Positions 323 through 26,971 of a stretch of 64,000 bases of DNA are shown here, one piece after another. The stretch comes from Ophelia neglecta (taxonomy: Eukaryota). The stretch's first letter is position 1; each line of letters opens with the position of its first letter. Both the position numbers and the translations under genes were made by a program. Where the stretch lies: the NCBI GenBank assembly GCA_965285935.1, contig OZ260661.1:96472001-96536000 (forward strand), read 5' to 3'. The notes beneath the pieces were generated by a model. The model searched no databases, was not told where the DNA came from, and saw nothing but the letters and a program-made list of their open reading frames with translations.

Positions 323-3300
323 ATGGCAGGCCAAAATCAAGTGGTGAGTCTGCCTGCCGTAAATGAAAATTATAAGTGTTCAAAATATTAGCAGGTTCTT
401 GTTAATTTGGTCCATACAATGCTTCATGTACAGCCTATTGCGACTGATGGAAGTGACAAGCATAAAGCTAATGTACTGGTTGTGTTGTATTTGGTGCTCC
501 CGTTTACCAGCGTTGCGCACGAAGACCACCACTGACTGACTATACATGGATTTGGTTTTAATAGGGTAAACCCGGCCTAGGTCTGGGCCTAGTAAGATAT
601 AGTTACTTTAACAGTTTAAGAGGTTGGGGCTTGGGGGCATTGACACTTTAAAATCGATTTAGTTTTGTAAGGCTATGCGAAGAAAGACCGTATCTAAATA
701 TAATAGGAGATGAAAATGACAATGTGTAGCTTTAAATTTAAGCTGATGGATTGAATTTCATCATCGTCTCACCAAATAGTGAACACCTCAATTGTAAATT
801 ATTTGCTCATTTTAATTGTATGGCATCCTTTGTATTTTGCATCTGTTTTTAACTATGGGCTAGTAACATGCTTGTAACACAAGCTGAAACACATTGTAAT
901 AATTAATGTGGTCTAGGTACTAGCAAAGGCCATGCTTCAGGGCACAGCTTGTTTTCCTCCATGCAACTACTGAATTATGTCCGTCAAAATATGCCAGGGC
1001 ACCCATTATTTAGATTGGCGGGAATTTACTGGTTTTTCCAAAAATCTGCCTGGCCAAAAAATATGGTGTTTCAAGATAAGAAAAGCAGAACGATTTTAGT
1101 ATCAAGTGAACCATATAACACTGTATTGCAAAAGCACTGCTTTTAAGTCCAGAACGAGAGGTTGCACTAACTAAAACCTAAACCTGTTACAACTTTCTAA
1201 AGCTCTGTGAAAGTAAGAACTAGATTAGTGCTGAAGCTTCTTTGTGTTTCCACCTCACTGCGGAGGTGGATCTAACATGTGACAGGGCGCCCATTAACAG
1301 AGTGCAACAATTATACTGTATATAAAAGCTGCCAAACAGTTTATACTTGCTTTGAATGATACATAAATGATTACATAGCAAATGATAAGTAGCCCTTAAC
1401 ACACCAAGCGCATTTTAACCATTAACATGAATGAGTCCCCCCCCCCCCTCAGAGGATTCCTTCATATAAAAGCAAATGTAAAATTATCCTTTTGTGAGGC
1501 CATCCTGATATTAAGCAATACAAATTAATAATTTCCCTGTTTCTCAGGCATCTTTTAGGCATTTTACAAATTAAACAGCATTGGGATTTATTTTCAAAAC
1601 CTGTCTCAGAACAATGGTCCAGTCTATTCTTTACTGTATATTTCTCCAGCACACTTATTTGTTACCCCAACAAAGTCCGGTTGTGATACATTAAAGTTAT
1701 CTATATGCTGCCGGCTCTTACAGTAGGCAGCAGGAGGGCATGCTCTTCTAAATGCCTTGAAAAAATGTCCCATTTATTGCTAATCAGAATTTTAATCATT
1801 ATTTACAGCCAAAAATATACAATGGTGTTGTAGAAGATGTCATAAATAATGTGAGAGAATCATTCCTGGATGAAGGTGTGGATGAACAAGTATTACAGGA
1901 ACTTAAACAGGTAAGACTGAAAACTACTATATCCAATTTGTTGCTCTTCAGCATGCTCTGCATTGCATTGCATTGTGCTCTGCATTGCAACTTTCTGAAT
2001 AGTGCCAATATCCGAGTCTGCCATGATGGTCAAAATATTTAATAAATAAGCGAGCCCAGTTTGCTAACACCATTTTTATCTTAATTCCCCTCACTTTGGA
2101 ACATTACGCGTCTTTTGTTTTATAGTTATGGACGACAAAACTTCAACAATCCAAGGCTGTTGATGGCAGTTCGTCAGAACAGCAGCAGTTGTTAGGAGCC
2201 TACCAACAACAGCGTGTACTCGTACAGCATGAACAGGTCAGACAACAGCAACAGCAGCGCCAACAACAACAACAGCAACATCAGCAACAGCAGCACCAGC
2301 AAGCAGCTGCCCAGCAAGCTGCTTTGGCACAGGCACAAGCACAAGCCTCACAGGCACAAGGTACATTCATTGGTGTGATAGTCCTTAATTTTTTACCGAA
2401 CAAAAATGGATAAGCAATTGTATCTACAGCATTCATTTTTAAGCTACACCAATAAAGTTGGTTATTCTCGATCATCCAACATGGCCAAATGAACCATTTG
2501 ACCAAATTCTTCAGATTATCTTCACAAATTATGACAGGGAGCTTAGCAGGAGAAGTCTAGTCAAAACAAGGAGTATCCCCGACAAATCTTCATTATTCAT
2601 TAAAAAAGTGAGAAATACAGAGAAGATCAAAACCGGGAGGAAACTTGATATTTTTTTTGCTTGGAGTTACAACCAAAGCCACGTGACTCCCGGTGAAACT
2701 GAAAAACATAAGCGTTACCTTTAAAATATGATGCTGCTTCCCAGACCCCCCTTCCCTCAAGTCACAATAATTCATTCCTCTAGCTGTCATGAATCCCCTG
2801 TCCCAATTAAAGAAATGGAATAGCCCTTAGGTATCCACACGATTAGCCAAGTCAGTTCCAATAGATTTAAAGTCATTCATACTCAACAATAAACTGTGCA
2901 ATATGTTATATGTTTTCCAGCTCCACCAGTGCAGCCACAATTACCCGTGATAAATCCTGCTACTGGCACCTTTGAAATGGTAGGTGGTGATTTTTACATT
3001 CAATGTTGGAAATAATACCTGGGTATGTAAAAATTCAGTTTTAGTTAGTTGTCCAGTGTTCAACACATTTGATCAGAATCCTTGCTGTCTCTAGCAGTGG
3101 TTGTTTGTCTTCCACTTTCTGTAGAGCACTTATCAGTGAAACCATCATCTTCTGTAACCCAGTTATACATAGTGACTTCCGAGGGAGTGATCCCAGGCTG
3201 TCTTTACTGAGACAGCGAAGTGGGTGCACTGTACTATGGCCACCACACAACGGCCTACTATAGACGGAGGCCAACACAGTCCAAGACACTGCCATTGACA

Positions 3301-5423
3301 CCTGTGAAAGTCAGTATGTGTATAATAATAAATTTAATAAAATACACAGTTGATATGATACATCAATCTTTGCATTGCAGAGTGGTGCAGCTCAAGCGGC
3401 AACTAGGGCCCTTCCACAGAATTTATTGCAACAGCAAATAGCAGCTTTACAGGGACAACTCCAGCCAGGCCAGTCAATAGTCATAAGTAAGTGAAGCATG
3501 TAAAGCCGATGTTGACATACATGTAGCACCCGTCCTGACATACATACAATTTGTGTACATTTTCTAAATGATAAAATTCAGGAAAGGCAATTATGAAAAT
3601 GAAGTTGAGAACATGGCTAATGCTGGCCTTATTTGGCCAAACTGATTGGTTCTTTAGGTGTTAATAGTCAAAAGACTAAATCTTTTTGAATTTCAGGGAA
3701 ACTCAGTACTGTACTGGTAAAGATTGGTAACTAATCCTATACTAACATTTATGTTATTCTTATGATTGACTTCTGTCATTTTCCTTTTGACTGAAGGTGT
3801 TTTTTACTATTTCAGACCAAGGGGGCAATCAGTATGTCCTTCAGACAACCCACACAGGCCAACAGATCCTGTTACAAACTCAACCAGCCGCGCCTCAGAC
3901 AACCTTTGCTCTGGCCCAACAGTCCACATCTACCCAACAGGTACGCTTACCTCTCATTAATTATGCTCTGTGGAAAATAACAGGCATTGTGTACAAAGAA
4001 CCAGTCATATGGTTGAAAAATTGATAGGTCCCAGTTTCAACAATAATATTTTCTGCGTTGGTAGAAGTAATCAGTTTAAGTTTGTATACTACTATTAGTA
4101 GTAAAAGTGATACACTGATCCATAAAATTAGTAAAGGATGTCTCCTCTACCTTAAGAACTGTATTTTCTTTTCATAGAACTTGCTTCTAATGTACAAGCT
4201 TTGTTTTGAGTTGAAAATTTATTTTTTATTTTTTTACTTTAGCAGCAACAACAGCAGAACCCTCAAGGTTTAATACAGCTAGATGGTGCTAATGATTCCA
4301 GCTCAGATGATGATGATGATGACGATGATGATGATGATAAAGATGATGACAATGATGATGAGGAGAATGAAGCTGCGGATGATTTGGGAGAGGAAGAGGT
4401 ATTGGAAGAATTGACTAATTGGTTTTATTTGCACATATGCATTTGTTTTAAGCAATAAAAGTTGTAAAACGTGAAATTTTCATGGTACCGAATTTTTACG
4501 CAACAGCTGCATTACATTTATGAAGCAAGTTATATTTGCGGTTACTGAATAGGTCCATCTATGTTATTAATAGTGTAGTAAAATCAGCATGAGAGGAACT
4601 CCTCCGTCACTGCATCCTACTGGTTCAGTTACATAGGGCTATTGTTACTCACAAGAGCATACTGCCGAGAAATTCAATCCATCCAGTCTGTATTGTGGTC
4701 AAAAGAAAAATCAGCAACTGGCAAATGCTGGGACAACAGGCAATAAAAAGTGTGAACTGTGAAATAGCTTGGCTTGTCATTTGATGTTTATTATTATAGG
4801 AGCCTCTAAATACTGATGATGATGTCAGCGAAGAAGACCCGGCCGATGTGTTTGACACAGACAATGTGGTCGTCTGCCAGTTTGATAAGGTAATGATATT
4901 ATCTATATTGAATGTCATAACTTTATTATGTAATGATTGATTTAATTGAAATGGGCCCAACCAAAGACTGCCTATGCAGTTTCTGCTCAGACACAATGAT
5001 TACCCTATACAGGGAGAGCTGAAATCAGATGGCCATGGGCCTGGCCAATCAACTGCATTGCAGGATACATTGAGGACATTGGTCAGATGGTCTGGTAACA
5101 ACACTCAGAAATCTTCAGCGTTTATATCTAGAGGGTGGTTAACCTTACAAAACTTATAGGGCAGGTTTTATAACAGTGTTAAGTGGGCAGTGTATCTTGG
5201 TACGCCCTGATAACAACAACCGACATTCATTATCTAGTAAACTGTTTAAAGCCAGAAACACTGTATATTTGAAAGAAAAAATCAATGTTTTTCATTTTTA
5301 TTCCTGATTTTTCAGATTAATCGAGCAAAGAATAAGTGGAAATTTCACCTTAAAGACGGGATAATGAATCTCAATGGCAAAGACTATGTATTTCAGAAAG
5401 GTACAGGTGACGCTGACTGGTGA
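323..5423 (+). CDS. GTF2A1: Transcription initiation factor IIA large subunit (alpha/beta precursor), about 333 aa, 9 exons
   Basis: Exons 323-343, 1809-1910, 2126-2360, 2921-2979, 3381-3486, 3816-3940, 4243-4398, 4800-4889 and 5316-5423 are all GT-AG and phase-consistent. The N-terminus (VPKIYNGVVEDVINNVRESFLDEGVDEQVLQELKQLWTTKLQQSKAV) and C-terminus (EEEPLNTDDDVS...DNVVVCQFDKINRAKNKWKFHLKDGIMNLNGKDYVFQKGTGDADW*) match the conserved TFIIA regions. A Q-rich linker, the taspase site QLDG and an acidic tract lie between them. Confidence 0.96.
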
Positions 5424-6488
5424 TAGTCATGTCAGCCACCAACAGACACATAATCTAACTATAAGTACCATGGCTTGCCATTTGATTTTTGACATTATTC
5501 GTTTCTGCAATGTTAGATAAAAACCATATGCAATTTCTCTTTACGTGGTAATTATGGCAAAAAAATTCGGGAAGGACTTAAATACAGACTCATTTGAATG
5601 TGTTCTGCCTTATTGGCCCTTTACAAAGCAAATAATTATGAAGACCATGCCAGGAAATTGTATTGTGAGCATAAGGAAATTTAAAGTGGTAAGCTATGAC
5701 ATACTTCTGTAGGTAATACTAATTTTGACATGGCGGACATCACAACTACCGGGTATGCTCTGTGTGTGTCCAGAGCCTATTTCTCTATTCCAGTGTTTAA
5801 CACGTGGAGTATTAAATGTGTATGTGTATATGGCAGATAATGTATGTGCAGTGTGAGGCGTGGCCAACACTTGTAAATTGGTTGTGTATTTTAAGTTGTA
5901 TGTGAAGAATTTGTAAAGCATGTATGTAAATGCTGTGAAAAAGGAACTATCGTCTCCATTATATTTTAAATACATGTATATTTATTGGATATGTACAAAA
6001 GTATGATATTGAATGATATCAAATGTGCACATTTTCATTTCAATGTATTTTCTTATCTGCTTTAAATTAGCAAGCAACTGGCTTTGTTCATGATGTTGGT
6101 TCAGTAGTGGTATCTTTGTGGACACTGCAAATAAAAATACAATTGTAGAGTTGGTTCTTTGGTTTTAAGGGTAAAAGTCTATATTTATACCCAAAGAGAT
6201 TCAGATTTAGGTGGAAGAGAAAAATGTGAATAGCCCTATTATTTGATAATGTATGTCTCAAGTACGAGGTGTGTTGGTCATTGTAGTCATATGTGGATTT
6301 GTTTGTTTGTAGACATTTACTTTTGATATGACATCTTGAATGGAACTTGTATTTGAGAATATTGGGTTTGATTTATGCCTTATTCAATGATAAATTTAGA
6401 TACTGGTATACTGATACCAATTATCATATGCAGTAAGGTCCAAAATATTGGTGGGGAAAATAGCTATCAACTGAAAAATCAACCTGAG

Positions 6489-6593
6489 TAGCAACCCTGC
6501 TTTGTTCCTGCACTAGCAGCCCTGCTTTGTTTCTGCACTAGCAGCCCTGCTTTGTTTCTGCACTAGCAGCCCTACTTTTTCCTGCACTAGCAG
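6489..6593. repeat. 25-bp minisatellite, about 4 copies (CTAGCAGCCCTGCTTTGTTTCTGCA)
   Basis: Direct tandem copies with few substitutions, downstream of the GTF2A1 stop codon. Confidence 0.9.
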
Positions 6594-9500
6594 GCAACAT
6601 TGTCTATATTTACACTGCTACTCAGGAAGTGAAACATGTATTTTGGAAGAAATATATTTCTGTGTGGTGGTTCAAAAGAGCAAAAACAAGATTCTCCACA
6701 GTTTATGAAGGTAGTGGACATGTGTTAATTTCACGTTTTCACAAATTTCTTATTCCAAGTAAAATTATAGTTGTGCAGGAATTTTTCGGGTTGCAAATTC
6801 ATCTGAACTTCTCCTAGTACTTTTTACTGCTTCACATGTAATATTTATAGGCTACTGTTAAATACGTGAAATTTAAAAAGAGTGGAATGAAATCCTTGCC
6901 AACATTTTGTCCCTTGCAGTGAAATGTTGGTCAAGAAAATACGTATGCCATTTAGTTCAGTATTCAAGTCAGATGAAATTCCTTGCTGGTTTTGTTGCTT
7001 TTGTCCTGCGGCTTGTAATGCTGTTCAAGTGCTAGTGCATTATTTTTATAAAGCGATTTGTTGTCTCAACTTGTCAATGTAAAAAATATAAAGTATTTTT
7101 ATGGGCAATTTCTGCTATTATATTAAATAGATTCTACCTGTGATTTTTTCATGACCTGCCAGTTTGTCATTTAATTAGTAAATAGGCTCTCCATATAATA
7201 TTAAGTAGCATTCAGAGAACTTTGATATAAAAACTAATTTTATTTGTAAGAAAGCTTCAATATTGTGTTTAAAGTCCTATGTTCATTGGAAATAAATACC
7301 CCATTTGCAAAGTTGCATATGATTTCTATTTTGATGTTTGGAAATTAATTAATAGTCTTGACTGCTGTAAACTGTCTGGAAATTAATAACAGTAGTAGCC
7401 TTGATTGTACATATAATCATTAATTTGGATAGAATACACCTGTCAACAATCGTGGCTACTTCAGAAAAGTTTATATAAGATCTAAATAAAAGGAACATAA
7501 GGATTTTTTAAAATTTAACAGAACATATGCATGCTTGTATTAAAGTGATTACTTTCAAAGTAGTATAGCAAGTAACAAATTTCAGTGGTGTTTTGTGTCG
7601 CGTCACAGTTTTTGGCCTGCAATAAACCCAACTAAGCCAAACACATTGTGAGCAAAGACCTGTCATGTATTTTAAAAAAACCTATATAAGCTTTGGCATA
7701 CTACGTACAATGCTTTTCTGATTACATTCGTCTATTTATCCATACAGTCTTAGCTTCCACTCTGGGGCCTAGACATGAAATGCTTAACCTTTGGTTGATA
7801 TGTGATTGTATTTGGCTGCTTTGGTACACATCCTGCAAGTTCTGAATTATAACAGCTAGGCTTTCAAAACGTGTGCAGGTGGTGGTTCCAAAAAAATACC
7901 CGTGGCTAGGGAAAATAACATACCCATGATCAGGTAAATCTGGCAAAATTCAAAACTTAGTACGAAAGGTCTTTCAAAAACAACCCATTTTTATGGCTAC
8001 CTTGCCTAAAATAACCCTATTTATGTACAACAGAGAATAGGGCTGCGCCATTGGGCGTTATTTGGTTCTGAAAATAACTCTCTGAGACAACTTTAGAGTG
8101 ACTAGTCAAAAAGAGAAAGGATCGCACAGGGTTTAGCGATTTGGTAATAAAAAAAACTTAGCAAATCTCGAATTGGTCAAGCAAGTCCGCCCTGTGTAAC
8201 GTTACATCGGCTTTATTACGTAGCAGGATTAGAAATCAAAATGAGGCAATTTTTGGTAAAGAGCTGGGAGCGAGAGTTTCAATCAGAATCTAAATTTCAC
8301 AGAGTAAATGTCGTGGGCATGTAGCACTGTACATTTAGGACATTATAAAATAAACTGGTTTGTTTCATTTTGGATTCGTGTATTGTTGGGATATCGGAAG
8401 TGAGTTAGAACAGGAAAAAAGGAAACCACTCAGTACCTATTGCCAAGCGGGTTCCCCGGAAAGTGGGCTCCACTAGGGCTTCATTTGCGTTCCTTATGCC
8501 AATACAATGTTGCATAGCCATGGATATATTCACAGTGTGGCCCGTCAATTTGCAATATCAATACTTTATATTTAGTATCACCATAAGTTGAGTAACTTCT
8601 TTTCAATAAAAAAGAGCTAAAGAAAGGCATTTTCGGACCATCAATGTCGGTCATGGAATTCCACAATAACTCATATTAACAACCCATGTAAATACTTCTA
8701 ACTAATCAATTCATTAATCATTTTATTCATTTATCACCACTCATATAATCCAAGATACATATTGATTATATTTTTGCTAGTTAATATAATTATGAGACTA
8801 AAACATTCAAATCTGCTATCATATATAAGGCTCTATTAACACACATATACAACATACCACTAAAACTTTCAATACAGCACCCCTTTCAAAATCCCGGTGG
8901 GTATATTATTTATAGCATAATACAGCTTAAACTTTCATTCCAATGTATACTCACAATACATAATATGATCAAGAACCTTGATATTAAGGCACACACATAT
9001 ATGCCTTCTAGACAGTAGAGGCCTAATGAAGGCTGGCACCAAATGTCGTAAAAAAATCATTGACCTGCTTCCATGTTTGAATCAATGAACCATTGAAGAG
9101 AATTGAGAATCATTCACAATTGAACTTAATTGTCACATGGTTTTTTATCAAATCAGCGACAAACCCGAGTGAAGGTAAAACATGGGAATCACGAAATAAA
9201 TCGTAGGCCTACAGCTAATGAAATTCATGGTTGATAAAAGCTGTGAATACGAAATAAAAAAATCATTTCAATGAGATTGGTCAAAACTGTAATATTAATA
9301 GAAATTCAATATTAGCTACATCAAGAATTTATTGCCATTCATTTCTTGGGCATAGATGTATAAATGTTTTAAGAAATCCTTGGTGAAAAAAAAGATTCAA
9401 AAATAACATTCTTTAAAAGTGAAAAATATAAATAAATAACTATATAATATATACTGCGAGGTAGTTAGATTAAACATACGATATACCGCACAATAATATT

Positions 9501-10056
9501 GTAACAAATTCGCATAGTAGGTAGTTTGTATTGAAACTATTTTTATTTTTCTAAGGTTGCTCGTCTGTGTAATGGCTCAAAAATTACCATCTTTCATTTG
9601 GATCACTGAAATTATAGGCTTATCTAAATTGTTTTATTTCTAGCAAAGAGCTGCATAAGCCTAAGGACACAAAAATGACGGTATATGTATCTATTTCTTT
9701 TCATAACAAACCGAAAAGGGCCGTTAAAATTTGAGGTAGGTAGGGCCTACATGGGCATTATTTTTAATAGACCCCTATTGACATAAAATAATGTCAAACA
9801 ATGAGATTTGAATAATCTTGTGCACATCTGTCGCAGTGTAAATAATTCAAGCCACACCATACACATCCTCGCACGTTAGCATCCATTGCACGAACTAATC
9901 AACCTTTAAATGCGTTGATTCTAATGTCATTTCTGTTAATATCGGGCAGTTTAAATTCAAAGTACCGGTAGGTGGGACTAGATGATTTGATTTGAAGAGA
10001 CAGTCGTGGTATCTTTTTTTTCACCGGTCCCAATTAAATATTAGACAAATATTTGA

Positions 10057-16000: not shown

Positions 16001-19000
16001 TTCCACCTAGGTCCCTGTCATGTTGATTCAAATTATTATATTTTATCGCCCTTTAAGCAAATTTTGTAATATTTTTTTAGACCATGCACTAATGCGGGAG
16101 TGACTTTAATAAAGTAATGTTATAAAACGCTAGTAAATAATTCAAAACGTACATGCGTAGAGCATGGCTTCCTCCGATTGAAAACAGGCTCCACCCTGGA
16201 GGCGCCTTGAGGCCACAGTCTTTGATAGCCCTGTGGCGGGGATAAAAATATAACATAATTAAGAGTTGTTATAGTACTATAACAACTCTTAATTTTAAAC
16301 TAGTTTATTCGAGATTTCTGAATATGTGCCTAGAAATAATTCTTACTGGCTTTTGTTGTTATAAGTCGACAAAAACTGTTTTTGCCGTTGCGCAGACGAT
16401 GCACAAACGCAGTGCGCTAACCCCACAAAATAATTTGAGCAGTGCCATATATTTATTACATTAAATCGTTGTTTGGCAACCTGTCATAGAAATGCCAGTA
16501 GGTATTTTGTTTTAAATTTTCTCGACTAGACTATTACACATCCAGCAGTTATGGCACTATTGCATTGCAGCGCAAAATGTGTTATTATGATACATACAGC
16601 TCTTGAAGTCCAGAGAAGCTCCCCAGCGCAAAATTAGGAATGTTTTCTAATAATGGAGATCCTTGGATAGTACTGGAAAAAATAACTTATGTATCATTTA
16701 TATTTCGTAACAGTCGATCAATCTTATTGAATTGAACGATAGGGAAAAATTAACTATAATAAACAATCACAAACTAAGGTGCTTACAAGTGGGATATTTT
16801 GGTGTTTCCTGCAAACTCAAACGCACCTTGCTTGATACTTGTCAATTTGAGATTCATTTTAAACAACCTGAAATAACATTCATTGTTACATTTTATCACA
16901 TTCATGTAGAGCTATCTGCATTATGAATTTGAAAACGTTGGATGCACGGCAACATTATTAATTTAAACGTGGTAAAATGAGAGTTATGGAACTTACAGAC
17001 TCCGTATGTTTTTATATTTGATAAGTTTACTTCCTGGGCTGTACATGTGGAACTCCTCGTAGTAATAATTTTCTGCGGTGAGGTTGACTATGCCAGTTTT
17101 GAGAAAAGTCCTGAAATATTTTAACACAATTAGAATGCCTGCTCTGCACTCTGGTTTTTTACATGTCCCTACCCCATAGAGGTAAATTTTCCGTGTTTGT
17201 TGAAATAAGGTTAAAAATCGAGGGTTTGGGCCCTATTTGTGTTCGTTTTTTACTTGGAATAACATATCGGCTCTGTGGTTTATCTAAGCTTTGAAGTAAA
17301 TCTGTACTGTAAGACGACTCGTCAAGTAGCAATTCCGTTGCCCTGGCTCCCAGTCCCGCTCATCCCCGAACATAGCAAATAAACCATCTAGGTGTGGATT
17401 GAAAACGCGCAGTCGAAGCTCAGCGTCTGAGTAGGCTACGACATGTACAAGGTCATGCGAAGGTCAATCAGTCCCCCTCGATGAGAGAGATGAAGGTTCC
17501 GTATCAGGGAAAGGTGGAAACAATCTGACCTTAAAAATGAGAAAAGGGTCGTCCATCTTCAAACTTATCCTAGTCCTAGTTTATGTGTTGAATAACTGAC
17601 AAAAGTTTGATGGAACTACCTGAAAATACTGCGATACAAATGCGTGTGCAGTGATTAAGGGACATTTTCGTCTGTTTAACAACTCCTCGATCGATTTCGT
17701 GAATCATCTCCCTCAAATTTTAAGTTAATTTATTTTTTATTTCGAAAGGGAAACCCTTCCTCAAAGGCCACCTCTATATTAAAACCACCTGCTTACTAAA
17801 ACCCCGATATTACGACAATAATTTACACTATCAATGTAAAATAAGCTGTCTAAACGGACCACCTCCATTTTGCAGTGGTTTGTCTCAATTCACAGGTATC
17901 ATCGCATACTTTCATGGGTAGTTCTGCACAGAAAAGAGAATTGTGCCTCGTAATCAATTCTGATGTTTTCAGTAATATGCCACTTGGACCGAACGTTATT
18001 CCGATTATCGAACTATTTCTTCCAATATGGATTCATAAGTGTCACCTTATAATTTAGTTATTTTAATCATATTGGTGATTGATGAACTCCGTTATATATG
18101 AAACTAGCTTTCACCACTAAATTTCGTGTCACGAATTCGAAATTAAATTTTAGGACCACGGTCTGCAGAAGAGTCCCGTGAAAGTTATAATCCAAGATAC
18201 CATGTTATTAAATGCCAAAACTAGTCGGACCTCAGGAACGGTCTGTGACCTTGAAAATAGGCCACGGTCGCCCACCTAGTAAATATATTAGTTATTAGTT
18301 GTGTGGTGATATCTGAAATCACTGTGACATGATTGCTAGTACAGTCATTAACGGAATATTTTGTCCGTGACCTTCAAAATAGGCCAAGGTCATCCATCTT
18401 CAAATTCACCCAAGGCCCTGTTGTAGTTAATAACTGACATGACCACTGTTGTGCTATCTCAGATTACCGCGACAAAATCATGCTTGCGTGTACAGTGATT
18501 AACGTATCTTTTTATCTGTGATCTTTAAAAATAGGCAAAGGTCACCATCTTAGAACGCATCTAAGGCCCTGGAGTAGGGAATAACTGACATTTGTTTCGC
18601 AGTGCTTTCGCAAATAACTGCGACACGTTTGCGATTAAAGTGATTAACGGATGTTGCTGCGGAGAATAACTTTGATGAATATAGCTCAAATAATATTGTG
18701 AGTTCAACGTTTCGGACGTATGGACGTAGCAGATACAGACAGAAAAAGAAAGGATGCTCGGGTAGCACTGCAGAGTCCCAGCGTCGCTCGCGACAAGGGA
18801 CCAAATAGTAAAACGCATCAAAGACACGGCATTGCGTGACAAAGTGAATGGCAATAGGTATGCGCAACAGAAGATAGTCCATAGAAGTTAGATTTGCTTC
18901 AATTCTATTGGGCTGCAGAGTTACTACTTTGACCAAAAGCTTTTTGGAATAGAACAAAGCGCACAGGCAGTGTTTTAAAATTCACTGCCGCGGAAGACAA

Positions 19001-22000
19001 TCTCGCCAAAAGCGTCAGGTACAGATCCGGAAACTATGTACTATTAGTAGTCGGTATTCAGCTAATTTCCGCCAGAAAATGTGGCGAGTCGATGTTTCCT
19101 GCCCTTCTATGTTGTTTCGCAGCAAAACAATTCACGTTTGTGGGCAGAGGATAGCATCCAAAAAAAACAGATTGTTTTTTATTTTCATTTTTGCATACTT
19201 CGAGCACAGGTACGCGAGGCGTCTATCCCCTACTACCTATAGATAACTAAAGGTTTGCAACTTCGCTGCTGCAGGGCCCGCAACTTGTCGGTCCAAGCTG
19301 TACTTCGCGATATATTCACTCCAGCAGTGATTTTCGGCAGACAACGCCACTTTCTAGGAAATAAAAGTATCACAAAAGCAACTAATTCGAACGTGTGTTC
19401 TTTTTGGTCCATAATGAAGCTGTCCCTATTAAAAGTAATCATATCCGAGCTACCCATTTATATTTTACCGTGTCTAAGTACGGCTCAAGCCATGGGAGAC
19501 CGTCCATCTTTGTCAACAAGTCGGCGGCACCGGGCTCGACTCTGATGCGGCCGCTGATTGGTCAGACTCGTAACTTTAATATTTTTCCGAAATAAAATAC
19601 TGGTAAATAAACCACTATTTCTTTTCGATGTGTTTGCCGATTCGGAATTTGTGCGCATAAATACAAAAACATAGAATGGGTAAATATTTTATAATAAGCA
19701 TTTTATTACTGATCGCCGCGTATCATGGGATCGAACCGCCATCTTGAATGGAGACCCAACAACAACATTTTACGAACGATTCGGACATTTACCTGTTTAC
19801 TTGTCTACTAATCTCCCTATTGCAAGGTGAAACTGTGTAAATATCAATACCCCCCCCCCCCCCTGTTAGAGATCGTATCAATTGCCTGCCCCCCCCCCCC
19901 CCCCTCCACACACACACACACACAGACATTCTGTCGACCTTCGTGTAATAAGTTGGCCAAAATAGGCTTGATTGATTTGATTAGAATCAATCAAATGAAT
20001 GAATAGGTTAATTGCAAATAGCTAAGAGACATTGTTGCCCCAGTAGACAGTGAAACGTCTGAGTGAAACCTGTGACAAACATTAGGTTAACGAGATTGAC
20101 TTCAACCTAGGTCGACCAATGGGCAATAGGCTATCTATGTACTACGTGGCTGCTGTATGTGGCGGGCCTGCCTGGTTACGCTGAAGATCGATCTTGACAG
20201 GCAAGCAACTTACCATTGATATTTGGCGAAAATTACTGAACGAGTGCCAGAAATGGCTCGAAATGGTATTAAAGTGGACTAAAACACACAAAGGGTTCGC
20301 ATAGATAATCATTGTTTGGAATTTATTGGCAAACATTGTTATGGCAGCCGAGAAACACGACTTAGACGCGATATCGGTGGCCTAATACTTGGACCGACAA
20401 GTTGCTAGTGTAGCGGTGGGGTGTTAACACTGGGCGCACAGCGAAGTTGCAAACCTTTAGTTACTAGCAGTGACCCGGGGGCAACCACGGTGAAAAGGGC
20501 AGCAGTGGATTGAATGGTGGTCAATTCGAAGAGGACAGTTTTCATTTGTTACTATTATAATGCTGGGTTGAGACAAAAAAATAGAAAAGTAAGTTGGTAT
20601 AAAAAAAATTCCATCATAAATGATAGTGCCTATATATTGCCAATGTTGGGAGAGACAAAACAATAAAAGTGCAAACAGATTTGAATGAAACATACATAGC
20701 AAAGGTAGTCTTAAGTTTTATTCCAGTCATCCAGCGAACACCTCTCGAGCAGTTCATTGAAGAATTTCAGGATTCACAACAGTTTTGGTGACTGTTGTCA
20801 TGGTGTCTGATGCATAACCCTGCTTTGTGGTGTTCTCGATTTTTACTTTAATGCGTTGAAATGATTTTGTCTGTGAGAAGGCTATGTATAGTTGTCCATG
20901 TGTGAAAACAGGGTCAGGAAAGTAAATGCCTATTTCTTTGAATGTTTACCCTTGCGCCTTGTTGATCGTTATTAAATAGGCTATCCGAGCAGGGAATAGG
21001 ATGTGTTCTAGGACGATAGTCAAATTCACATCTGATGGGGCGAGTTTAATGCGGGGAATGAGAATCCTCTTCCCTGCCTGTGTGTTCGCCACAACCACTG
21101 TGCCAATTGTGTCGGCATGAAGGTGACGAACAATCTGGCGGGTCCCATTACAAAAGCCCTTTTTAATGTCAAGGCTACGAAGGAGCATTATCAATGCACC
21201 CTTCTTCAGGATCACTTTGTGCTCTGGCATTCCTGACGGAGTGAGACTGTTGAGGAATTCAACTGGGAAATTGTTCTCGTCAGGGTTGTGGGACACAATA
21301 CAGTCAATGCTCAGGTTTTTTTTTTTTTTGCTCCCTGAAAGTTGTTTGAGGATTTCTCTGTTGATGGCCAAGATGGTGTCATTTTTGGGGGTTAGTATTA
21401 TTTGTTTGGAAACATCACCCTCTAATGTTGGGTATACTGCTTGTACCAGGTCCCCCTCGCACAGGCACTCATTAGGAATGTGAATTGAGCAGTCCCCAAA
21501 CGTAGCCCTACAATAATTATATATAAATAGTAACGGTAATGTCCTTATTCCCTCACAATTGAGATAATTTTATTCACACATTTAGTTTTGAATTCCTACA
21601 TTAAATTTCTAATCATATCCCAACCGGTACAATTAAATTTCCGTACACTTTAATTTGAATCACTGCAAACAGTTTTCCTACATTTTAATATCAATAACAA
21701 TTTCTCTGCATTATTCTATCTCTCCAAATAAATCCCCGGATGGCAGCTTTGTCTAAGGTTCAGTAATGAGTCCAGAGGCGTAGGAAGGAAAATCAAAGTG
21801 AGGGGGCCAACTTTACATCAGCAGCATAAAAAGTGGGGGGGGGGGGGCAAAACATATGATGGCCCCCCACTTTTTTAAGTCGGGGGGGGGGGGGGGCGGG
21901 GGCATGCCCCCCTGACTTAAAAAAGTGGGGGGGGGGGGGGGGCATGCCACTGTACATTGATCTTTACGTGCCAAAAAAACATTGAATAAATTCAATTATC

Positions 22001-25000
22001 GGGTGTGTATTGGTTTGTAAATAACCTGCCTACAGGTAACTGTTTGATGATGGTCTAGCCAACTGAGGACAGACGCTCCTAACCACTGCTGCATTACACT
22101 GTGACCATTTTAAGAGGGGAAAAAGTAAGAGGGTCATCATTAAAAAGTGGGTGGGCCAAAACATTTGATGCCCCCCCCCCCCATTTTTTAAGCGCCCCCG
22201 TTTTATTGTCGTTTTCCCTCAAGAAGGACTCACTCATTAAAAAAATATTGACAGCCCTTTGACCCCCTGGCCATATATATTTAACCTTGCAAGGGTATCT
22301 ACAAATGGCTTAGTATTGAGCACTTTTCCCAAGAGGAGAACTCATTCATTAATCAAAAAATGACAGCCCTTTGATCACCAGTAGGCTCTGTTCTGAGGTG
22401 TTGAATATTACATTTCGAATTGGGTCATAGCTAAGACGACTGAATGATTAACTGGCACCAACCTCCCATGTTGTGTATTACTTGCCGTGTTAAAATGAAA
22501 GTAACAATGTAGCATATAAATTTGATTTGACAGGTGTCAACACTTGTAAAGGAACCTGTCATAATAGTTTATTATATCACAGCTAATTCGTCACTTTTCC
22601 TTTAGTCAACATTTGTAAAGAAACCTGTCATAATAGTTTAGTATGTCACAGCTAATTCATGACGTTTCCCGTACTTGTTGCTGTCAATGATATCCCAAAA
22701 CATCAGGCGTTTGCAATAGTTTGTTACCAACACATTACTCTGCCAATAATACCTCAATTTTTGCATATATTCTGCCAGTGCAAGGTGTCCACTGGGCATA
22801 TGTACATAAAGCCATCGCTGTCCTTATATATATACAAACAATAACACGCGTGGGAATGAAAATAGGTCGGGTCAAGCTATAAAGGAATCCAGCGCATTGA
22901 TACGAAGTCAGTGAGCCGTAGACTGGTAAAAAGTAGTACAAACTGTCTATTTTGTCAGAGGGTTTTGGTGATGTCGAAAACATTCTAATAAACAAACAAA
23001 TCGAATCGACTCATGCAGCAAGTATCCGACAATATATTACTCATCAAATCGGCCTCCTTTCCCATGAAATACACAGCTGACTGTGGCGTACGAATATTCA
23101 AAGCTGCGAGTCGTTCGTATCGAGACTGCATGGTCGGGTGTCCACCTTCCCTTCGTAGCAGTGCACACAGCTCTGTTCTCTTCGCCTGTAGCGGTGATGC
23201 GGAGAAGCTAGATGCGATAAGCATTGGCACCTGCTGCGAAGGGTAGTGTCCAACCCAACCGGATAAAATGGCGGCGATCGGCAGACGACAGAGGCGAGCG
23301 AAAAGGCAAACGCGCACGGTTCGAAGGTTTACATCGCACCGAACTGGTCCGAAATAAAAAATTCCACGATTGGAGCGGACAGAAAGGCGTCGCCAAAAGT
23401 TGGGGGCGTACCGTCCGCCAGCGGCCGAGAAAAATCGTAAACAATTGGGTAATATATAATAGATCTATAGGTAGTAGGGGATAGACGCCTCGCGTACCTG
23501 TGACTTCGAGCTGCTGTGCGTTATAGAGAAACAAGTGTTCAAGGGCATAGGCTCATTCGGTTGTAGTTAACTGCTTCCTTTCATTCGCGAAAAAGGCGCC
23601 TTCTTGACTCTTAAATTGCCAACGGTGTCCTAGCAATGCATGGAACAATGCGTTGGGCGGCTACATAATGCATATTGCTATTGTGTTGGGCTAGTTTTAA
23701 CGATTGTTTGAATATAAATAAGAAACTTCAACTTAATTGAGGAGAACGCCTCCTTTGTCTGTAGCTAAGTTTGCTAAGACTTCGAACTGTCTCATATGTT
23801 TCACATTGCGATATATATATATATAGCCCTCCATTGGCAATNNNNNNNNNNNNNNNNNNNNNNNNNNNNNNNNNNNNNNNNNNNNNNNNNNNNNNNNNNN
23901 NNNNNNNNNNNNNNNNNNNNNNNNNNNNNNNNNNNNNNNNNNNNNNNNNNNNNNNNNNNNNNNNNNNNNNNNNNNNNNNNNNNNNNNNNNCAACGGACAA
24001 AAGGGGGCTTTGCCATAAAACAGACGATGAATAGCACTTTGAAACTGGAAATGATATTTATCTATAAAAATGTACAATAAGTAAATGACAACATAAAAAC
24101 TTAACATGAAATACCCAAGCTCGTATTTATATAAAGCCTATCAATTTTTTCTATACTACCGTAGTGCTAACATGGGAATGCGCATATATACAGTTACATA
24201 GATTTGTGCCACGTTTCCTCAAGTTATGGTGGCATTCAGTAAGAATTGAGTTTTGACTTTATTATCTTTACGTCCGTAATTAATCATATTTACACGATCC
24301 AGCTTACCACGTTCAGCTTGCTTTACAAACCCATGGATTGCCGAAACTCTGTGGATTACTTAACGCACCATCTTGCTAAAAATGGTAAGCGACAGTAGCA
24401 TTGCAACTACCAAGCAGGCAAAGACACACTCGACAGGAGTTAATTAGACAAAACCATTCAGGGAAGAGAGTGATTTGTCTCAAGGTAATGGATAGAAGGC
24501 TAACACATGGGATAGATACAACTAATCTTACATCGACCTTGTGTCCAACCATATATATGGACTACATATAGGCAGGCTGATGTTTGTTTCGGATCATTTG
24601 CAGAGAAATGCTAAAACATCGGAATCTATGGGCTTAATATCAGTGTCAGTGGCTGTTTTCACTGCTTTATTATGCCCTTTTATTTATTAACTATTTATTT
24701 TTATGAGACAAATTCATGTCCCTTTGAAAATCAATTATAATACTGGTCTAAACAGCTTACACGCATGTGTCGAAACACGAGATGCAGTTTTAATACCAAA
24801 CTATAAGGCATATTAAGATGGTTAATGTAAGTTTACGCAAGTGCAAAGTGGAAAATAATTAAAATGCAAAACCTATAATGCAAAAGATATAATTCAAAAG
24901 GTATGATTGTAATGCCATCGGACTTGAGAGCGAAACATTTACTAGGTGTAGTTACTGCTGAGTGTAAACAGTCACCCGGATGTAGTATTATGACACTAAC

Positions 25001-26971
25001 GCTGTCAGTCGGTATGTAGAATATTGCAAATAAATGTTTATGTGAATTGAAAAAGATTTTCTTTTTTCATTTTTAAACTTGATGTTACTGTTATTCTATA
25101 TACTGCATTTAGCCTGTATATAGTGTTAACGAAACAAACATTTTGTTACGGAATGATCCTTTTTCAAATGCGCATCTTCTCTGCCAATTTATTTAGTTCT
25201 TGGTTGAACCAATTCAGTAAAAATCAACATACATGTACTTACAAAACCTCCTCTAGTATCAAAATAGATGTCAACCAAAACACCATATATGCACACTATG
25301 AATGCAAATAGCAAGTTTGGCATGGCAGAAAGTGTTAAAAAAAACATATAAACTATTTTGTTTCATAAAATAAACAAATAAACAGTTCTTTCCTATTTTC
25401 AGTTCTTACACTGTTTTTTAAATAACAACTTTGTGGTTTTGTAAAAGAAATGGCGCCATAAAATGCACAAAGAGGTAGAAACGTGTCACTCACAGGAAAC
25501 TAACAAACCTCCTCTGTGCATCCTTCTGCCAGGAATAAAACTTCATTGGGCATCCTTCTTCTACGTTAAACCTCCTTTGTGCACACTGACCTAAATCTTA
25601 GTTTGTTACACCGCCTTGAAATCAGGTACTTGATAAAGACCATAATTTATGGTTATAATGTTTTAACTAATATCAAATATTTTTGATCATCAGCCCAAAT
25701 TGTCAATTATGCACATCGTAGGTTTTGACATGAAAACAACATCACTTTTCTACCTCCCACTTTTTGTCCGAAATGTAGTTCTTTCAGCGCAAAATAAGGC
25801 ATAGGCCTATGTGGACTTTTTTTTTAATTAATTTTTTTTAATTCTACAGGGAAGAAACGTGTTTTGGATGTCACTCACACACGCAACACTCAAGAGTATC
25901 AACTTGTATGAACGATTTAATACGGATTTTCTCTATGGCCTTTACAGTTATTTGGTGAGAAAATGTTGTCATTTGTCTAGTGCAATCGCGCTCTTCATAG
26001 CATTTCTCCCCACGGACCAATATTCAATGCAATGGTAAAGGGGTATACATGGGTCCCCAAAATGCTGAGTATGACCGTATCAATATTTAAGAAAATGCCA
26101 CTGTCGAGGGCTGATATTTATGTTTATGTGTTGGTTCAATATTTAAGAAAATTTAAATATCATGTGTCAATATTTAAGGAGAAAAAATGTGTTTTTGCTC
26201 AATATTAAGCCCACGCTCATTTCAGTGTTGCGGGTCGAATTAAAAAAGTGTCGTGCGTCAAAATGTTAGCGAATTCTTGCGTATGTCAATGTATTTATAA
26301 CATGCGTTCAGCATAAAGCGGACGGTATATAAAGGTGTATAAATTGCGGTGTTTTATTGAAAACACATGAATAGGCGTGCAGTGTTTCTTGGCCACTCGT
26401 TTTACCAATACATACCGATAATGGTATAGTGATAGGGAGTGCACAGTGAGAGGGGACCATGTGTCATGATCAGAAACGTAAGATTATCGTTGAAAAATAA
26501 GAAATATGTGTTGAAGCGTTCCTTAATATGTACAAAATGGTCGAGCTGCTCAGATCCATAATGTACGGGCTATCTGCCCGTCTCGCATGATGAATTTGTA
26601 TTAGTAAATTTAGTCAAAGTGGGTTATAAGTTTGTTTTCACTGTAGGTACATTTTCCTATAATTGCGCCAGATATACATGCATGTATATCTGGCGCAATT
26701 ATAGGAAAATGTCGGTAAAGGAGGAAGAGCTAGGGTGAAATCACATTACTCACACATTAGTGACGTTCTCCGGAAGTCCCGCGGGTATGTCAGTTATTTG
26801 GTCACCCTGGCACATGACAATTGTTTTATCTACCTCGAAACAACAGCCGCAGCCATCACATTCCACCCAGTCAGTACGTGCGCAAACCAGATCTCCGCCG
26901 AGAGAGGACGGGTCAGCGCCCAAACACAGCCCCAACAAACACACTACCATGGCCACTTTCTTCGACCACAT
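10057..26971 (-). CDS. LGR1: Glycoprotein hormone receptor / type A leucine-rich-repeat GPCR (likely co-orthologue of TSHR/LHCGR/FSHR), about 1037 aa, 12 coding exons
   Basis: Exons (-): 26971-26754 (signal peptide and Cys-rich N-cap), 17110-16997, 16867-16787, 16672-16598, 16230-16153, 16014-15862, 15618-15541 (LRR exons with phase-2 introns), 15307-15106 (LTYHHHCCAF), 14910-14451 (hinge, FNPCEDLMG), 12626-12474, 12145-11925 (ERW) and 11337-10057 (KRMAVLVITDF, PLNSCCNPFLYA, long tail). Frames join consistently if intron 9 uses a GC donor. A splice acceptor at 26987-26986 implies an upstream 5'UTR exon. Confidence 0.93.
16257..16294. repeat. 38-bp perfect palindrome
   Basis: AATTAAGAGTTGTTATAGT|ACTATAACAACTCTTAATT, with no spacer. 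Confidence 0.95.
17749..17902. mobile_element. Degenerate Tc1/mariner-type MITE, same family as the copies at 47253 and 47713
   Basis: Shares repeated CCACCT motifs, CTGTCTAAACGGACCACCTCC and a terminal ACAGGTATCA with the 47-kb copies. Confidence 0.55.
18150..18806 (+). mobile_element. Helentron/DINE-1-like non-autonomous element with about 150-bp internal tandem units
   Basis: Three units start TGACCTTnAAAATAGGCnAnGGTC (near 18246, 18368 and 18518; a fourth related unit lies near 17526). A short GGAC/AGAC-type run near 18714-18742 is followed by a terminal stem-loop GTCCC..GTCGC-TC-GCGAC..GGGAC at 18775-18801. The family call is inferred from structure only. Confidence 0.55.
19246..20461. 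mobile_element. Nested 1.2-kb TIR element flanked by TA
   Basis: Inverted ends ACTAAAGGTTTGCAACTTCGCTG, plus a subterminal inverted block GCAACTTGTCGGTCCAAG at both ends. TA at 19244-19245 and 20462-20463. Confidence 0.75.
20464..21510 (-). mobile_element. Helitron 3' fragment: decayed Rep/Hel PIF1-helicase C-terminus, 3' hairpin and CTAG terminus
   Basis: Translation reads ILTPKND...FPVEFLNSLTPSGMPEHKVILKKGALIMLLRSLD...CNGTR...ILIPRI...TINKAQG*TFKEIGIYFPDPVFTHGQLYIAFS...KTVVNPEILQ* (final stop at 20756-20754, internal stop at 20948-20946). An imperfect GC hairpin at 20491-20473 precedes CTAG|T at 20467-20463. Confidence 0.9.
21774..21950. repeat. G-run-rich foldback / MITE-like repeat, with a partial second copy at about 22140-22200
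   Basis: Inverted arms CCCCCCACTTTTTTAAGTC ... GACTTAAAAAAGTGGGGGG surround a GGCATGCC centre, with long G tracts. Confidence 0.6.
23842..23990. other. Assembly gap (149 N) inside receptor intron 1
   Basis: Run of N characters. Confidence 1.
26649..26712. repeat. 64-bp perfect palindrome
   Basis: ACATTTTCCTATAATTGCGCCAGATATACATG|CATGTATATCTGGCGCAATTATAGGAAAATGT, with no spacer. Confidence 0.97.

What the first reader, a model, noticed from the sequence alone, without database searches (positions are those of the whole stretch)
323..26971. GTF2A1 and a glycoprotein hormone receptor are tail-to-tail, the vertebrate TSHR-GTF2A1 / LHCGR-GTF2A1L pairing in an apparent invertebrate
Seen: TFIIA alpha/beta (+) and a type A LGR (-) converge, with about 4.6 kb between their stop codons and no gene in between. 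Established: in mammals TSHR lies convergently next to GTF2A1 (then STON2), and LHCGR next to GTF2A1L/ALF (then STON1); these are paralogous blocks from vertebrate genome duplication. Inference: the 7TM region here is split by introns, unlike mammalian receptors, so this looks like a pre-duplication invertebrate locus. The pairing would then be a very old microsyntenic unit, possibly kept together by shared 3' or enhancer elements. It would also support orthology of this receptor to the TSHR/LHCGR/FSHR ancestor by position.
Basis: partly seen in the sequence, partly recalled or inferred. Interest (0 to 1): 0.85.

Follow-up and report, generated by a model that had tools for sequence, protein, structure and literature searches.

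The report
Ancient TFIIA–hormone receptor gene pair
In this annelid genome the general transcription factor gene GTF2A1 and a thyrotropin/gonadotropin-type hormone receptor gene lie tail to tail, as they do in vertebrates and in an acorn worm, so the pairing probably dates from the common ancestor of bilaterian animals, although many other invertebrates have lost it.

Summary
Window 323-5423 (+) holds an intact nine-exon TFIIA alpha/beta gene, the only one in the genome. Window 26980-10057 (-) holds an intact ten-exon type A LGR. The stop codons are 4,633 bases apart, and I found no gene between them.

By phylogeny the animal is an annelid. The receptor falls in the same orthogroup as vertebrate TSHR, FSHR and LHCGR.

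I tested eleven other invertebrate loci with flanks of 10 kb or less:
- Saccoglossus (hemichordate) has a TFIIA gene on the opposite strand, 300 bases past the receptor gene's 3' end.
- Capitella, Paralvinella, Priapulus, Asterias and Nematostella have other genes there.
- Three molluscs and two unnamed contigs were uninformative.

Chance juxtaposition is therefore very unlikely. The pair is best read as bilaterian ancestral microsynteny that has often been broken. Stonin, the third vertebrate neighbour, lies 45.5 Mb away on the same chromosome.

The assembly gap lies in receptor intron 1, and no reading frame crosses it. No RNA data exist, so UTR overlap and shared regulation remain untested. 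I found no paper describing the invertebrate pairing, but the supplementary microsynteny tables could not be read. The scan's earlier notes on this genome do not report the pairing.

The parts
323..5423 (+). TFIIA alpha/beta (GTF2A1 orthologue). Nine coding exons: 323-343, 1809-1910, 2126-2360, 2921-2979, 3381-3486, 3816-3940, 4243-4398, 4800-4889, 5316-5423. 333 codons. It has a Q-rich middle, a QLDG motif and an acidic stretch in exon 7, and a conserved C-terminal exon.
   Evidence: PF03153 matches at 1815-1910, 4800-4892 and 5316-5420, and is single-copy in the genome.
5424..10056 (.). Interval of 4,633 bases between the two stop codons. It holds the presumed 3' UTRs of both genes, and no gene was detected. 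Two old interspersed repeats lie at about 7862-8116 and 8128-8479. The nearest poly(A)-signal hexamers lie 388 and 707 bases after the TFIIA stop and 289 to 724 bases after the receptor stop.
10057..11337 (-). Receptor last exon: TM4 to TM7, NPFLY, helix 8, and a C-terminal tail of about 250 residues.
   Evidence: LHCGR 184 bits; 7tm_1 at 4.7e-13.
11925..12145 (-). Receptor exon for TM2 and TM3, with the ERW motif.
12474..12626 (-). Receptor exon for TM1.
14451..14910 (-). Receptor hinge exon. It ends in NVTCTPEGDAFNPCEDLMG and has a polybasic RPRRRRGS stretch. The only frame-consistent donor is GC (14450-14449).
   Evidence: It matches FSHR DVTCSPKPDAFNPCEDIMG.
15106..16867 (-). Five leucine-rich repeat exons, joined by phase-2 introns; the last exon ends in phase 0: 16867-16787, 16672-16598, 16014-15862, 15618-15541, 15307-15106. 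The last exon ends in ...SLTYHHHCCAFQ. My model gives about seven repeats.
   Evidence: TSHR residues 219-274 match at E 2.8e-9.
16868..26753 (-). Receptor intron 1. It contains transposon remains (a Pif1 2B helicase fragment at 20946-21371) and the assembly gap at 23842-23990.
26754..26980 (-). Receptor exon 1: signal peptide and the cysteine-rich N-terminal cap of the leucine-rich repeat domain.
   Evidence: (Pecten residues 23-58, E 0.001).

Best explanation
Two intact, unrelated genes converge here. One is the single TFIIA large-subunit gene, the GTF2A1 orthologue. The other is the annelid orthologue of the vertebrate glycoprotein hormone receptors. By homology it is a receptor for a thyrostimulin-type cystine-knot hormone, with a leucine-rich repeat ectodomain, a hinge carrying the FNPCEDLMG motif, and a rhodopsin-type 7TM domain.

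The arrangement is inherited. The same tail-to-tail pair is present in a hemichordate and in vertebrates, where it occurs twice (TSHR-GTF2A1 and LHCGR-GTF2A1L). It was therefore already present in the last common ancestor of protostomes and deuterostomes, and the vertebrate genome duplications copied it.

I judge retention to be mostly passive or only weakly constrained. The interval is short and holds two 3' ends, so it offers few places where a break is harmless. Even so, the pair was broken independently in many lineages.

What is shown: both gene models, the type A membership, the annelid origin, and the adjacency here and in Saccoglossus. What is inferred: the ancestral age, the ligand and signalling, and the reason for retention.
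For: - Gene models and distance.
- Type A identity.
- Orthogroup and annelid placement. The annelid clade has support 100/98, and the orthogroup with vertebrate, ambulacrarian and Nematostella receptors has 87/94.
- Saccoglossus: a PF03153 gene on the opposite strand starts 300 bases after the end of the receptor gene.
- Vertebrate neighbourhoods: FSHR-LHCGR-GTF2A1L-STON1 (PMC12360902) and CEP128/GTF2A1/STON2/SEL1L around TSHR (PMC7339439).
- Chance estimate (mine): with about 20,000 genes, one named gene is the immediate neighbour of another with probability about 1e-4. Even within one linkage group of about 800 genes it is about 2.5e-3. Two independent invertebrate hits by chance would be about 1e-5 or less.
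- Against strong constraint: other genes follow the receptor in Capitella, Paralvinella, Priapulus, Asterias and Nematostella. A tblastn search with the TFIIA exons found nothing in those flanks.
- The assembly is continuous between the two genes.
Against: - Only one invertebrate outside this genome shows the pair.
- No DNA was returned for the Saccoglossus locus, so that neighbour rests on a precomputed Pfam hit to a 118-residue product.
- Flanks were limited to 10 kb. In the molluscs and in two unnamed contigs no annotated or homology-supported gene followed the receptor within 10 kb. For one search no DNA was returned, so its flank could not be searched for TFIIA. These loci say nothing either way.
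- Survival in three distant lineages, and in both vertebrate duplicates, may be more than passive retention would give.
- Neither gene has transcript evidence here.
- The hinge/TM1 intron needs a non-canonical GC donor.
Confidence: 0.55

Rival explanations
1. The pair is ancestral and is held together by function. One version is that regulatory elements of the receptor lie within or beyond the TFIIA gene, which would then be a bystander gene in a regulatory block. Another is that the convergent 3' ends share termination or antisense control, so breaks between the genes are selected against in lineages that keep this regulation.
For: The pair survives in an annelid (this window), a hemichordate and both vertebrate duplicates. 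Irimia et al. 2012 (PMC3514665) attribute much deep microsynteny to cis-regulatory constraint. The gene ends are close: 300 bases in Saccoglossus and 4.6 kb between stop codons here.
Against: The pair is broken in five of the seven informative invertebrate lineages, including two annelids and genomes I know as slowly rearranging. The interval here holds interspersed repeats, and no conserved element could be shown. There are no expression data.
Confidence: 0.33
2. Chance: the two genes came to lie side by side independently in this annelid, in Saccoglossus and in vertebrates.
For: The two nearest named annelids lack the pair.
Against: The same two single-copy orthologues lie in the same convergent orientation, with no gene between them, in three distant lineages. 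My estimate of the joint chance probability is about 1e-5 or less. Stonin on the same chromosome is consistent with an old shared linkage group.
Confidence: 0.05
3. Assembly artefact: the two genes are joined wrongly in this scaffold.
For: An assembly gap lies inside the receptor gene at 23842-23990.
Against: The gap lies in intron 1, 13.8 kb beyond the receptor's stop codon. The stretch from the TFIIA 3' exons to the receptor's last exon has no N. Independently assembled contigs of three runs tile it at even depth without joints.
Confidence: 0.02

Closest known systems
Vertebrate TSHR-GTF2A1(-STON2) and FSHR-LHCGR-GTF2A1L(-STON1) blocks
   Same: A glycoprotein hormone receptor gene directly next to a TFIIA large-subunit gene, 3' end to 3' end. 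The neighbourhood is from PMC12360902 and PMC7339439. The orientation is from my own knowledge.
   Different: - There is one receptor and one TFIIA gene here, as expected before the vertebrate duplications.
- Stonin is not adjacent; it lies 45.5 Mb away.
- The 7TM region is split into three exons, whereas in vertebrates it is a single exon (my knowledge).
Saccoglossus kowalevskii FSH receptor-like gene (XP_002739238.1) with its TFIIA neighbour
   Same: The orthologous type A LGR has a PF03153 gene on the opposite strand directly after its 3' end.
   Different: The Saccoglossus receptor gene spans 104 kb, against 17 kb here. The annotated gene ends are 300 bases apart. No DNA was returned, so the interval could not be compared.
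Deeply conserved metazoan microsyntenic pairs (Irimia et al. 2012, PMC3514665)
   Same: Two unrelated genes kept adjacent across phyla.
   Different: I could not check whether this pair is in their lists, because no supplementary files are held. The main text does not name it. This pair has been lost in many lineages.
Invertebrate LGR1-type thyrostimulin (GPA2/GPB5) receptors
   Same: Type A architecture, and membership of the protostome clade of the receptor tree.
   Different: - About seven leucine-rich repeats in my model, against nine in FSHR (my recalled FSHR sequence, not checked by a tool).
- Paralvinella shares one of the two missing repeats.
- The ligand genes were not identified here.

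Membership tests
Type A LGR (glycoprotein hormone receptor) | The 7TM domain is closer to TSHR/FSHR/LHCGR than to type B (LGR4-6) or type C (RXFP1/2) receptors. | tested here: met
   LHCGR 184 bits, TSHR and FSHR 172, LGR4 62, RXFP1 50. In the trees the window's receptor sits inside the orthogroup that holds vertebrate and ambulacrarian receptors.
Type A LGR (glycoprotein hormone receptor) | A hinge bounded by CCAF after the last leucine-rich repeat and by C-x-P-x-x-DAFNPCED(I/L)MG before TM1. | tested here: met
   HHHCCAFQ at the end of exon 6 and NVTCTPEGDAFNPCEDLMG at the end of exon 7. One search shows the same motif in most homologues checked; the pattern was not found in four of nineteen.
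Type A LGR (glycoprotein hormone receptor) | A short ectodomain of about 7 to 9 leucine-rich repeats with an N-terminal cysteine cap and no LDLa module. | tested here: met
   the cap lies in exon 1 and about seven repeats in exons 2-6. No LDLa match appeared in the Pfam scans. One or two further small exons cannot be fully excluded.
Type A LGR (glycoprotein hormone receptor) | Binds a heterodimeric cystine-knot hormone and signals through G proteins. | not testable with these tools
   Inferred from homology only. PF00236 was not detected exon by exon. Weak PF00007 matches occur elsewhere in the genome.
TFIIA large subunit (GTF2A1) | A conserved N-terminal helical region and a C-terminal beta-barrel region of Pfam TFIIA, separated by Q-rich and acidic stretches. 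| tested here: met
   profile positions 1-32, 346-381 and 381-415 are matched, and the last exon scores 74.7 bits. The Q-rich exon 3 and acidic exon 7 were read directly.
Conserved bilaterian microsyntenic pair | The same two orthologues are adjacent in at least two protostome/deuterostome lineages beyond the reference. | tested here: met
   This annelid plus Saccoglossus plus vertebrates. The pair is absent in five other informative lineages.
Conserved bilaterian microsyntenic pair | The adjacency is maintained by shared cis-regulation. | not testable with these tools
   There are no RNA or chromatin data, and no orthologous intergenic DNA was available.
Vertebrate-type STON-GTF2A1-receptor trio | A stonin gene directly upstream of TFIIA. 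| tested here: not met
   The stoned-B orthologue is at C1:51.02 Mb, while the window is at C1:96.47 Mb. SEC23 lies to the left.

The most novel reading that the evidence does not exclude
The TFIIA-receptor pair is a functional unit kept since the bilaterian ancestor. In this reading receptor enhancers, or a convergent 3'-end control element, are entangled with the TFIIA gene. That could also explain why both copies of both genes stayed together after the vertebrate genome duplications, with the gonad-specific GTF2A1L next to the gonadotropin receptors.
Probability: 0.3. Interest if true: 0.7.

Novelty: new member of a known kind. Interest (0 to 1): 0.5.

Why it matters
- It gives positional evidence, independent of the sequence trees, that the invertebrate LGR1-type receptor and vertebrate TSHR/FSHR/LHCGR descend from one ancestral locus.
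- It dates the TSHR-GTF2A1 and LHCGR-GTF2A1L neighbourhoods to before the protostome-deuterostome split.
- It offers a small, well-defined pair for asking whether deep microsynteny of convergent genes reflects regulation or slow decay. The many independent losses provide natural controls.
- It is one more case of a known phenomenon, not a new kind of system.

Tried and rejected
- Looked for TFIIA next to the receptor orthologue in eleven other taxa or contigs, using all 12 look-ups. Only Saccoglossus was positive. The contig of the closest relative (P0001) ends 529 bases after the gene. Pinctada, Pecten, Haliotis and two unnamed contigs showed no annotated or homology-supported gene within 10 kb.
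- Ran tblastn with the window's TFIIA exons and with the stonin ORF against every fetched flank. Nothing was found.
- Searched for extra leucine-rich repeat exons in intron 1 and in the intron at 16597-16015, using a homologue profile and a splice-phase scan. None was convincing. I rejected a candidate at 17055-16954 because of its poor score, and because by my recalled FSHR sequence exon 1 joins exon 2 directly; the profile alignment did not confirm that join.
- Searched for RNA runs to map the 3' ends. None exist, and only three DNA runs of one sample were found. Poly(A) hexamers are too frequent in this AT-rich DNA to be decisive.
- Compared the 3' flank with the closest relative. Only coding sequence aligns, at 69%.
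- Literature: seven searches found no paper on the pairing in invertebrates. Supplementary tables of Irimia 2012 and Simakov 2015 are not held.
- Looked for the ligand genes by Pfam in the genome. The result was inconclusive.
- The type C outgroups have very long branches and unstable positions in the IQ-TREE run. The type A/B/C assignment therefore rests mainly on the scores against solved structures.
All searches were exon by exon and by reference. I did not look into or across the N gap.


Full report
**What is in the window**

Six-frame reading and splice-site inspection give a nine-exon TFIIA alpha/beta gene on the + strand. The exons are 323-343, 1809-1910, 2126-2360, 2921-2979, 3381-3486, 3816-3940, 4243-4398, 4800-4889 and 5316-5423, in total 333 codons. 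Exon 2 (PKIYNGVVEDVINNVRESFLDEGVDEQVLQELKQ) matches the start of Pfam TFIIA. The penultimate and last exons match profile positions 346-415, and the last exon scores 74.7 bits. Exon 7 carries a QLDG motif followed by an acidic run. By my own knowledge this is the usual position of the Taspase-1 site of TFIIA. A six-frame Pfam scan of the whole 762-Mb assembly finds PF03153 only here, so this is the single GTF2A1 orthologue.

**The receptor**

On the minus strand, homologues found by protein search map by tblastn to a colinear series of exons. A profile of six homologous ectodomains, together with a scan for phase-compatible exons, located the short leucine-rich repeat exons. My model has ten coding exons and 976 codons:

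| Exon | Coordinates | Content |
|---|---|---|
| 1 | 26980-26754 | signal peptide and cysteine cap |
| 2-6 | 16867-16787, 16672-16598, 16014-15862, 15618-15541, 15307-15106 | leucine-rich repeats; exons 2-5 have phase-2 introns on both sides, exon 6 ends in phase 0 |
| 7 | 14910-14451 | hinge |
| 8 | 12626-12474 | TM1 |
| 9 | 12145-11925 | TM2-3 |
| 10 | 11337-10057 | TM4-7 and a long tail |

One junction is unusual. The only frame-consistent donor after ...NPCEDLMG is GC (14450-14449). The resulting MG-KET-LR spacing equals the MG-xxx-LR spacing of the homologues that carry the NPCED motif. Without RNA this remains a model.

**Type A, B or C**

- The TM4-7 exon scores 184 bits against LHCGR and 172 against TSHR and FSHR. 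It scores 62 against LGR4 and 50 against RXFP1.
- Exon 6 aligns to TSHR residues 219-274, including ...SYPSHCCAF (E 2.8e-9; LGR4 only 20 bits).
- The hinge exon ends in NVTCTPEGDAFNPCEDLMG, against FSHR DVTCSPKPDAFNPCEDIMG.
- The same genome also holds two single-exon type C receptors whose best match is RXFP1 at 248 and 231 bits. It also holds a second, divergent type-A-like receptor on another chromosome.

The window's gene is the one that belongs with the vertebrate receptors.

**Whose genome**

In a FastTree of 224 TM4-7 segments and an IQ-TREE of 44, the window's receptor sits in a clade with Paralvinella and Capitella. Support is 0.887 SH-like in the first tree and 100/98 in the second. 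This clade lies in a protostome group with the mollusc, priapulid and arthropod receptors; FastTree, but not IQ-TREE, puts the molluscs next to the annelids. That group in turn joins the ambulacrarian (Saccoglossus, Anneissia, Asterias, Diadema), vertebrate (lamprey GpH-R I, TSHR, FSHR) and Nematostella receptors. The animal is an annelid. Its closest sequence in the databases is only 74% identical. The type C outgroups have very long branches and unstable positions, so the class assignment rests mainly on the scores against solved structures.

**The observation itself**

The two stop codons are 4,633 bases apart (5424-10056). The interval has no Pfam match in any ORF of 50 residues or more. 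It has no Rfam family and no tRNA. It contains two old interspersed repeats at 70-80% identity to their copies. Contigs assembled independently from three runs of one sample tile 4800-10700 end to end, at even depth and without joints. The juxtaposition is therefore not a scaffolding artefact.

**The assembly gap**

The gap at 23842-23990 lies in the 9.9-kb first intron of the receptor, next to the transposon remains noted earlier in this scan. A Pif1 2B-domain fragment at 20946-21371 confirms that these are transposon remains. No real frame crosses the gap. Exon 1 ends ...GLPENVTN|V, and the next exon found begins LFKMNLKLTSIKQGAF. In FSHR the same junction reads ...RNAIE|LRFVLTKLRVIQKGAF, which is my recalled sequence and was not checked by a tool. 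The six-homologue profile did not confirm this join: hmmalign aligned exon 2 to a later repeat, and profile positions 54-80, one repeat, stayed unmatched between exon 1 and exon 2. I therefore expect no coding exon inside the gap, but cannot exclude one.

My model has about seven repeats against nine in FSHR. By that same recalled FSHR sequence the missing two would fall between exons 3 and 4, where there is no gap, and Paralvinella lacks one of the same repeats. By the profile, one of them could instead fall between exons 1 and 2, in the intron that holds the gap. I did not try to read or fill the gap. The physical link of exon 1 to the rest of the gene therefore rests on the scaffold.

**Is the pairing old?**

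I looked up the genomic surroundings of receptor orthologues in other animals, with 10-kb flanks.

| Taxon | What follows the receptor's 3' end |
|---|---|
| Saccoglossus kowalevskii | PF03153 (TFIIA) gene on the opposite strand, 300 bases after the gene's annotated end |
| Capitella | Kunitz, trypsin and trefoil genes |
| Paralvinella | a LIM gene |
| Priapulus | MINDY4 |
| Asterias | an unidentified 1,245-residue gene, 6 kb away |
| Nematostella | Tctex-1 |
| Pinctada, Pecten, Haliotis, two unnamed contigs | no annotated or homology-supported gene within 10 kb |
| Closest relative (P0001) | contig ends 529 bases after the gene |

The window's TFIIA exons find nothing by tblastn in any of the fetched flanks.

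The vertebrate neighbourhoods are documented. One is FSHR-LHCGR-GTF2A1L-STON1 (PMC12360902). The other is the CEP128/GTF2A1/STON2/SEL1L region around TSHR (PMC7339439). That both vertebrate pairs are convergent is from my own knowledge of the human map.

A named gene is the immediate neighbour of another by chance about once in 10,000 genomes of this gene number. Within a single ancestral linkage group the figure is a few times in a thousand. Two independent invertebrate occurrences in the same orientation are therefore not credible as chance. The simplest reading is one ancestral pair, present in the protostome-deuterostome ancestor. It was copied by the vertebrate duplications and broken independently in many lineages, including other annelids. 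Nematostella lacks the pair, so nothing supports an age older than Bilateria.

**Stonin**

The only mu-homology matches on this chromosome are far away. One is a single 1,035-residue ORF at C1:51.02 Mb with a C-terminal mu-homology domain. Its relatives are named stoned-B throughout molluscs and arthropods. It lies on the same 149-Mb chromosome, 45.5 Mb from the window. The vertebrate trio is thus only a pair here.

**Why it stayed together**

This could not be tested. No RNA run exists for the organism. Poly(A) hexamers are too common in this AT-rich DNA to place the 3' ends. No orthologous intergenic DNA was available, since the Saccoglossus locus came without DNA and the closest relative's contig ends 529 bases after the stop.

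Survival in three distant lineages and in both vertebrate duplicates argues for some constraint, of the kind Irimia et al. proposed for deep microsynteny (PMC3514665). Against this, the pair is broken in five of seven informative invertebrates, among them genomes I know as conservative. I put passive or weakly constrained retention at about 0.55 and functional constraint at about 0.33. Chance gets 0.05 and artefact 0.02.

**Novelty**

Seven full-text searches found no paper that mentions TFIIA/GTF2A1 beside an invertebrate glycoprotein hormone receptor. Roch and Sherwood 2014 analysed synteny of the ligands only. The pair may still sit unnoticed in supplementary microsynteny tables that I could not read. 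It is a new example of a known kind of thing. It is useful to receptor evolutionists as positional support for orthology, and as a compact test case for the causes of deep microsynteny.

The gap's letters were neither filled nor sought elsewhere.

Noticed in passing
G000:C1:51017775-51020882 (L013:3276-6383, minus strand): The stoned-B/stonin orthologue is a single 1,035-residue ORF with a C-terminal mu-homology domain. It lies on the same chromosome as the window, 45.5 Mb away.
   Followed up: yes
G000:C9:74346742-74348388 (L002:208-1854, minus strand): A second, divergent type-A-like LGR (TSHR 93 bits against LGR4 58). In the trees it falls outside the glycoprotein hormone receptor orthogroup, with an unnamed clade of about 40 database proteins.
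   Followed up: partly
G000:C7:83285939-83287570 (L003) and G000:C5:68608191-68610656 (L004): Two type C (relaxin-receptor-like) LGRs, each with leucine-rich repeats and part or all of the 7TM domain in one large ORF. The best solved-structure match is RXFP1, at 248 and 231 bits.
   Followed up: partly
window 14451-14910, minus strand: The receptor hinge carries a polybasic RPRRRRGS stretch that looks like a furin-type site, which by my knowledge recalls the cleaved hinge of TSHR. The intron after this exon needs a GC donor at 14450-14449.
   Followed up: no
G000:C1:96463060-96463994 (L015:1060-1994, minus strand): SEC23 N-terminal exons (Sec23/24 zinc finger and trunk domain) lie about 8.3 kb to the left of the TFIIA start codon.
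   Followed up: partly
window 53194-54906, minus strand: A 570-residue ORF that encodes many EGF repeats of the teneurin/Delta-Jagged kind (Pfam EGF, 117 bits).
   Followed up: no
window 7862-8116 and 8128-8479: Two old interspersed repeats, 70-80% identical to dozens of copies genome-wide, lie in the TFIIA-receptor interval.
   Followed up: partly
L010:1-13766 (Priapulus caudatus KQ715420.1): Two receptor gene models lie in tandem (795 and 614 residues, same strand, 1 kb apart). They may be a tandem duplicate or one gene split by annotation.
   Followed up: no
G000:C2:93384173-93453996, C1:111078271-111078576 and C1:114849659-114849889: Weak Cys_knot (PF00007) matches, including a cluster of three on C2. 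They are candidates for GPB5/bursicon-type ligand genes. Hormone_6 (GPA2) was not detected exon by exon.
   Followed up: no
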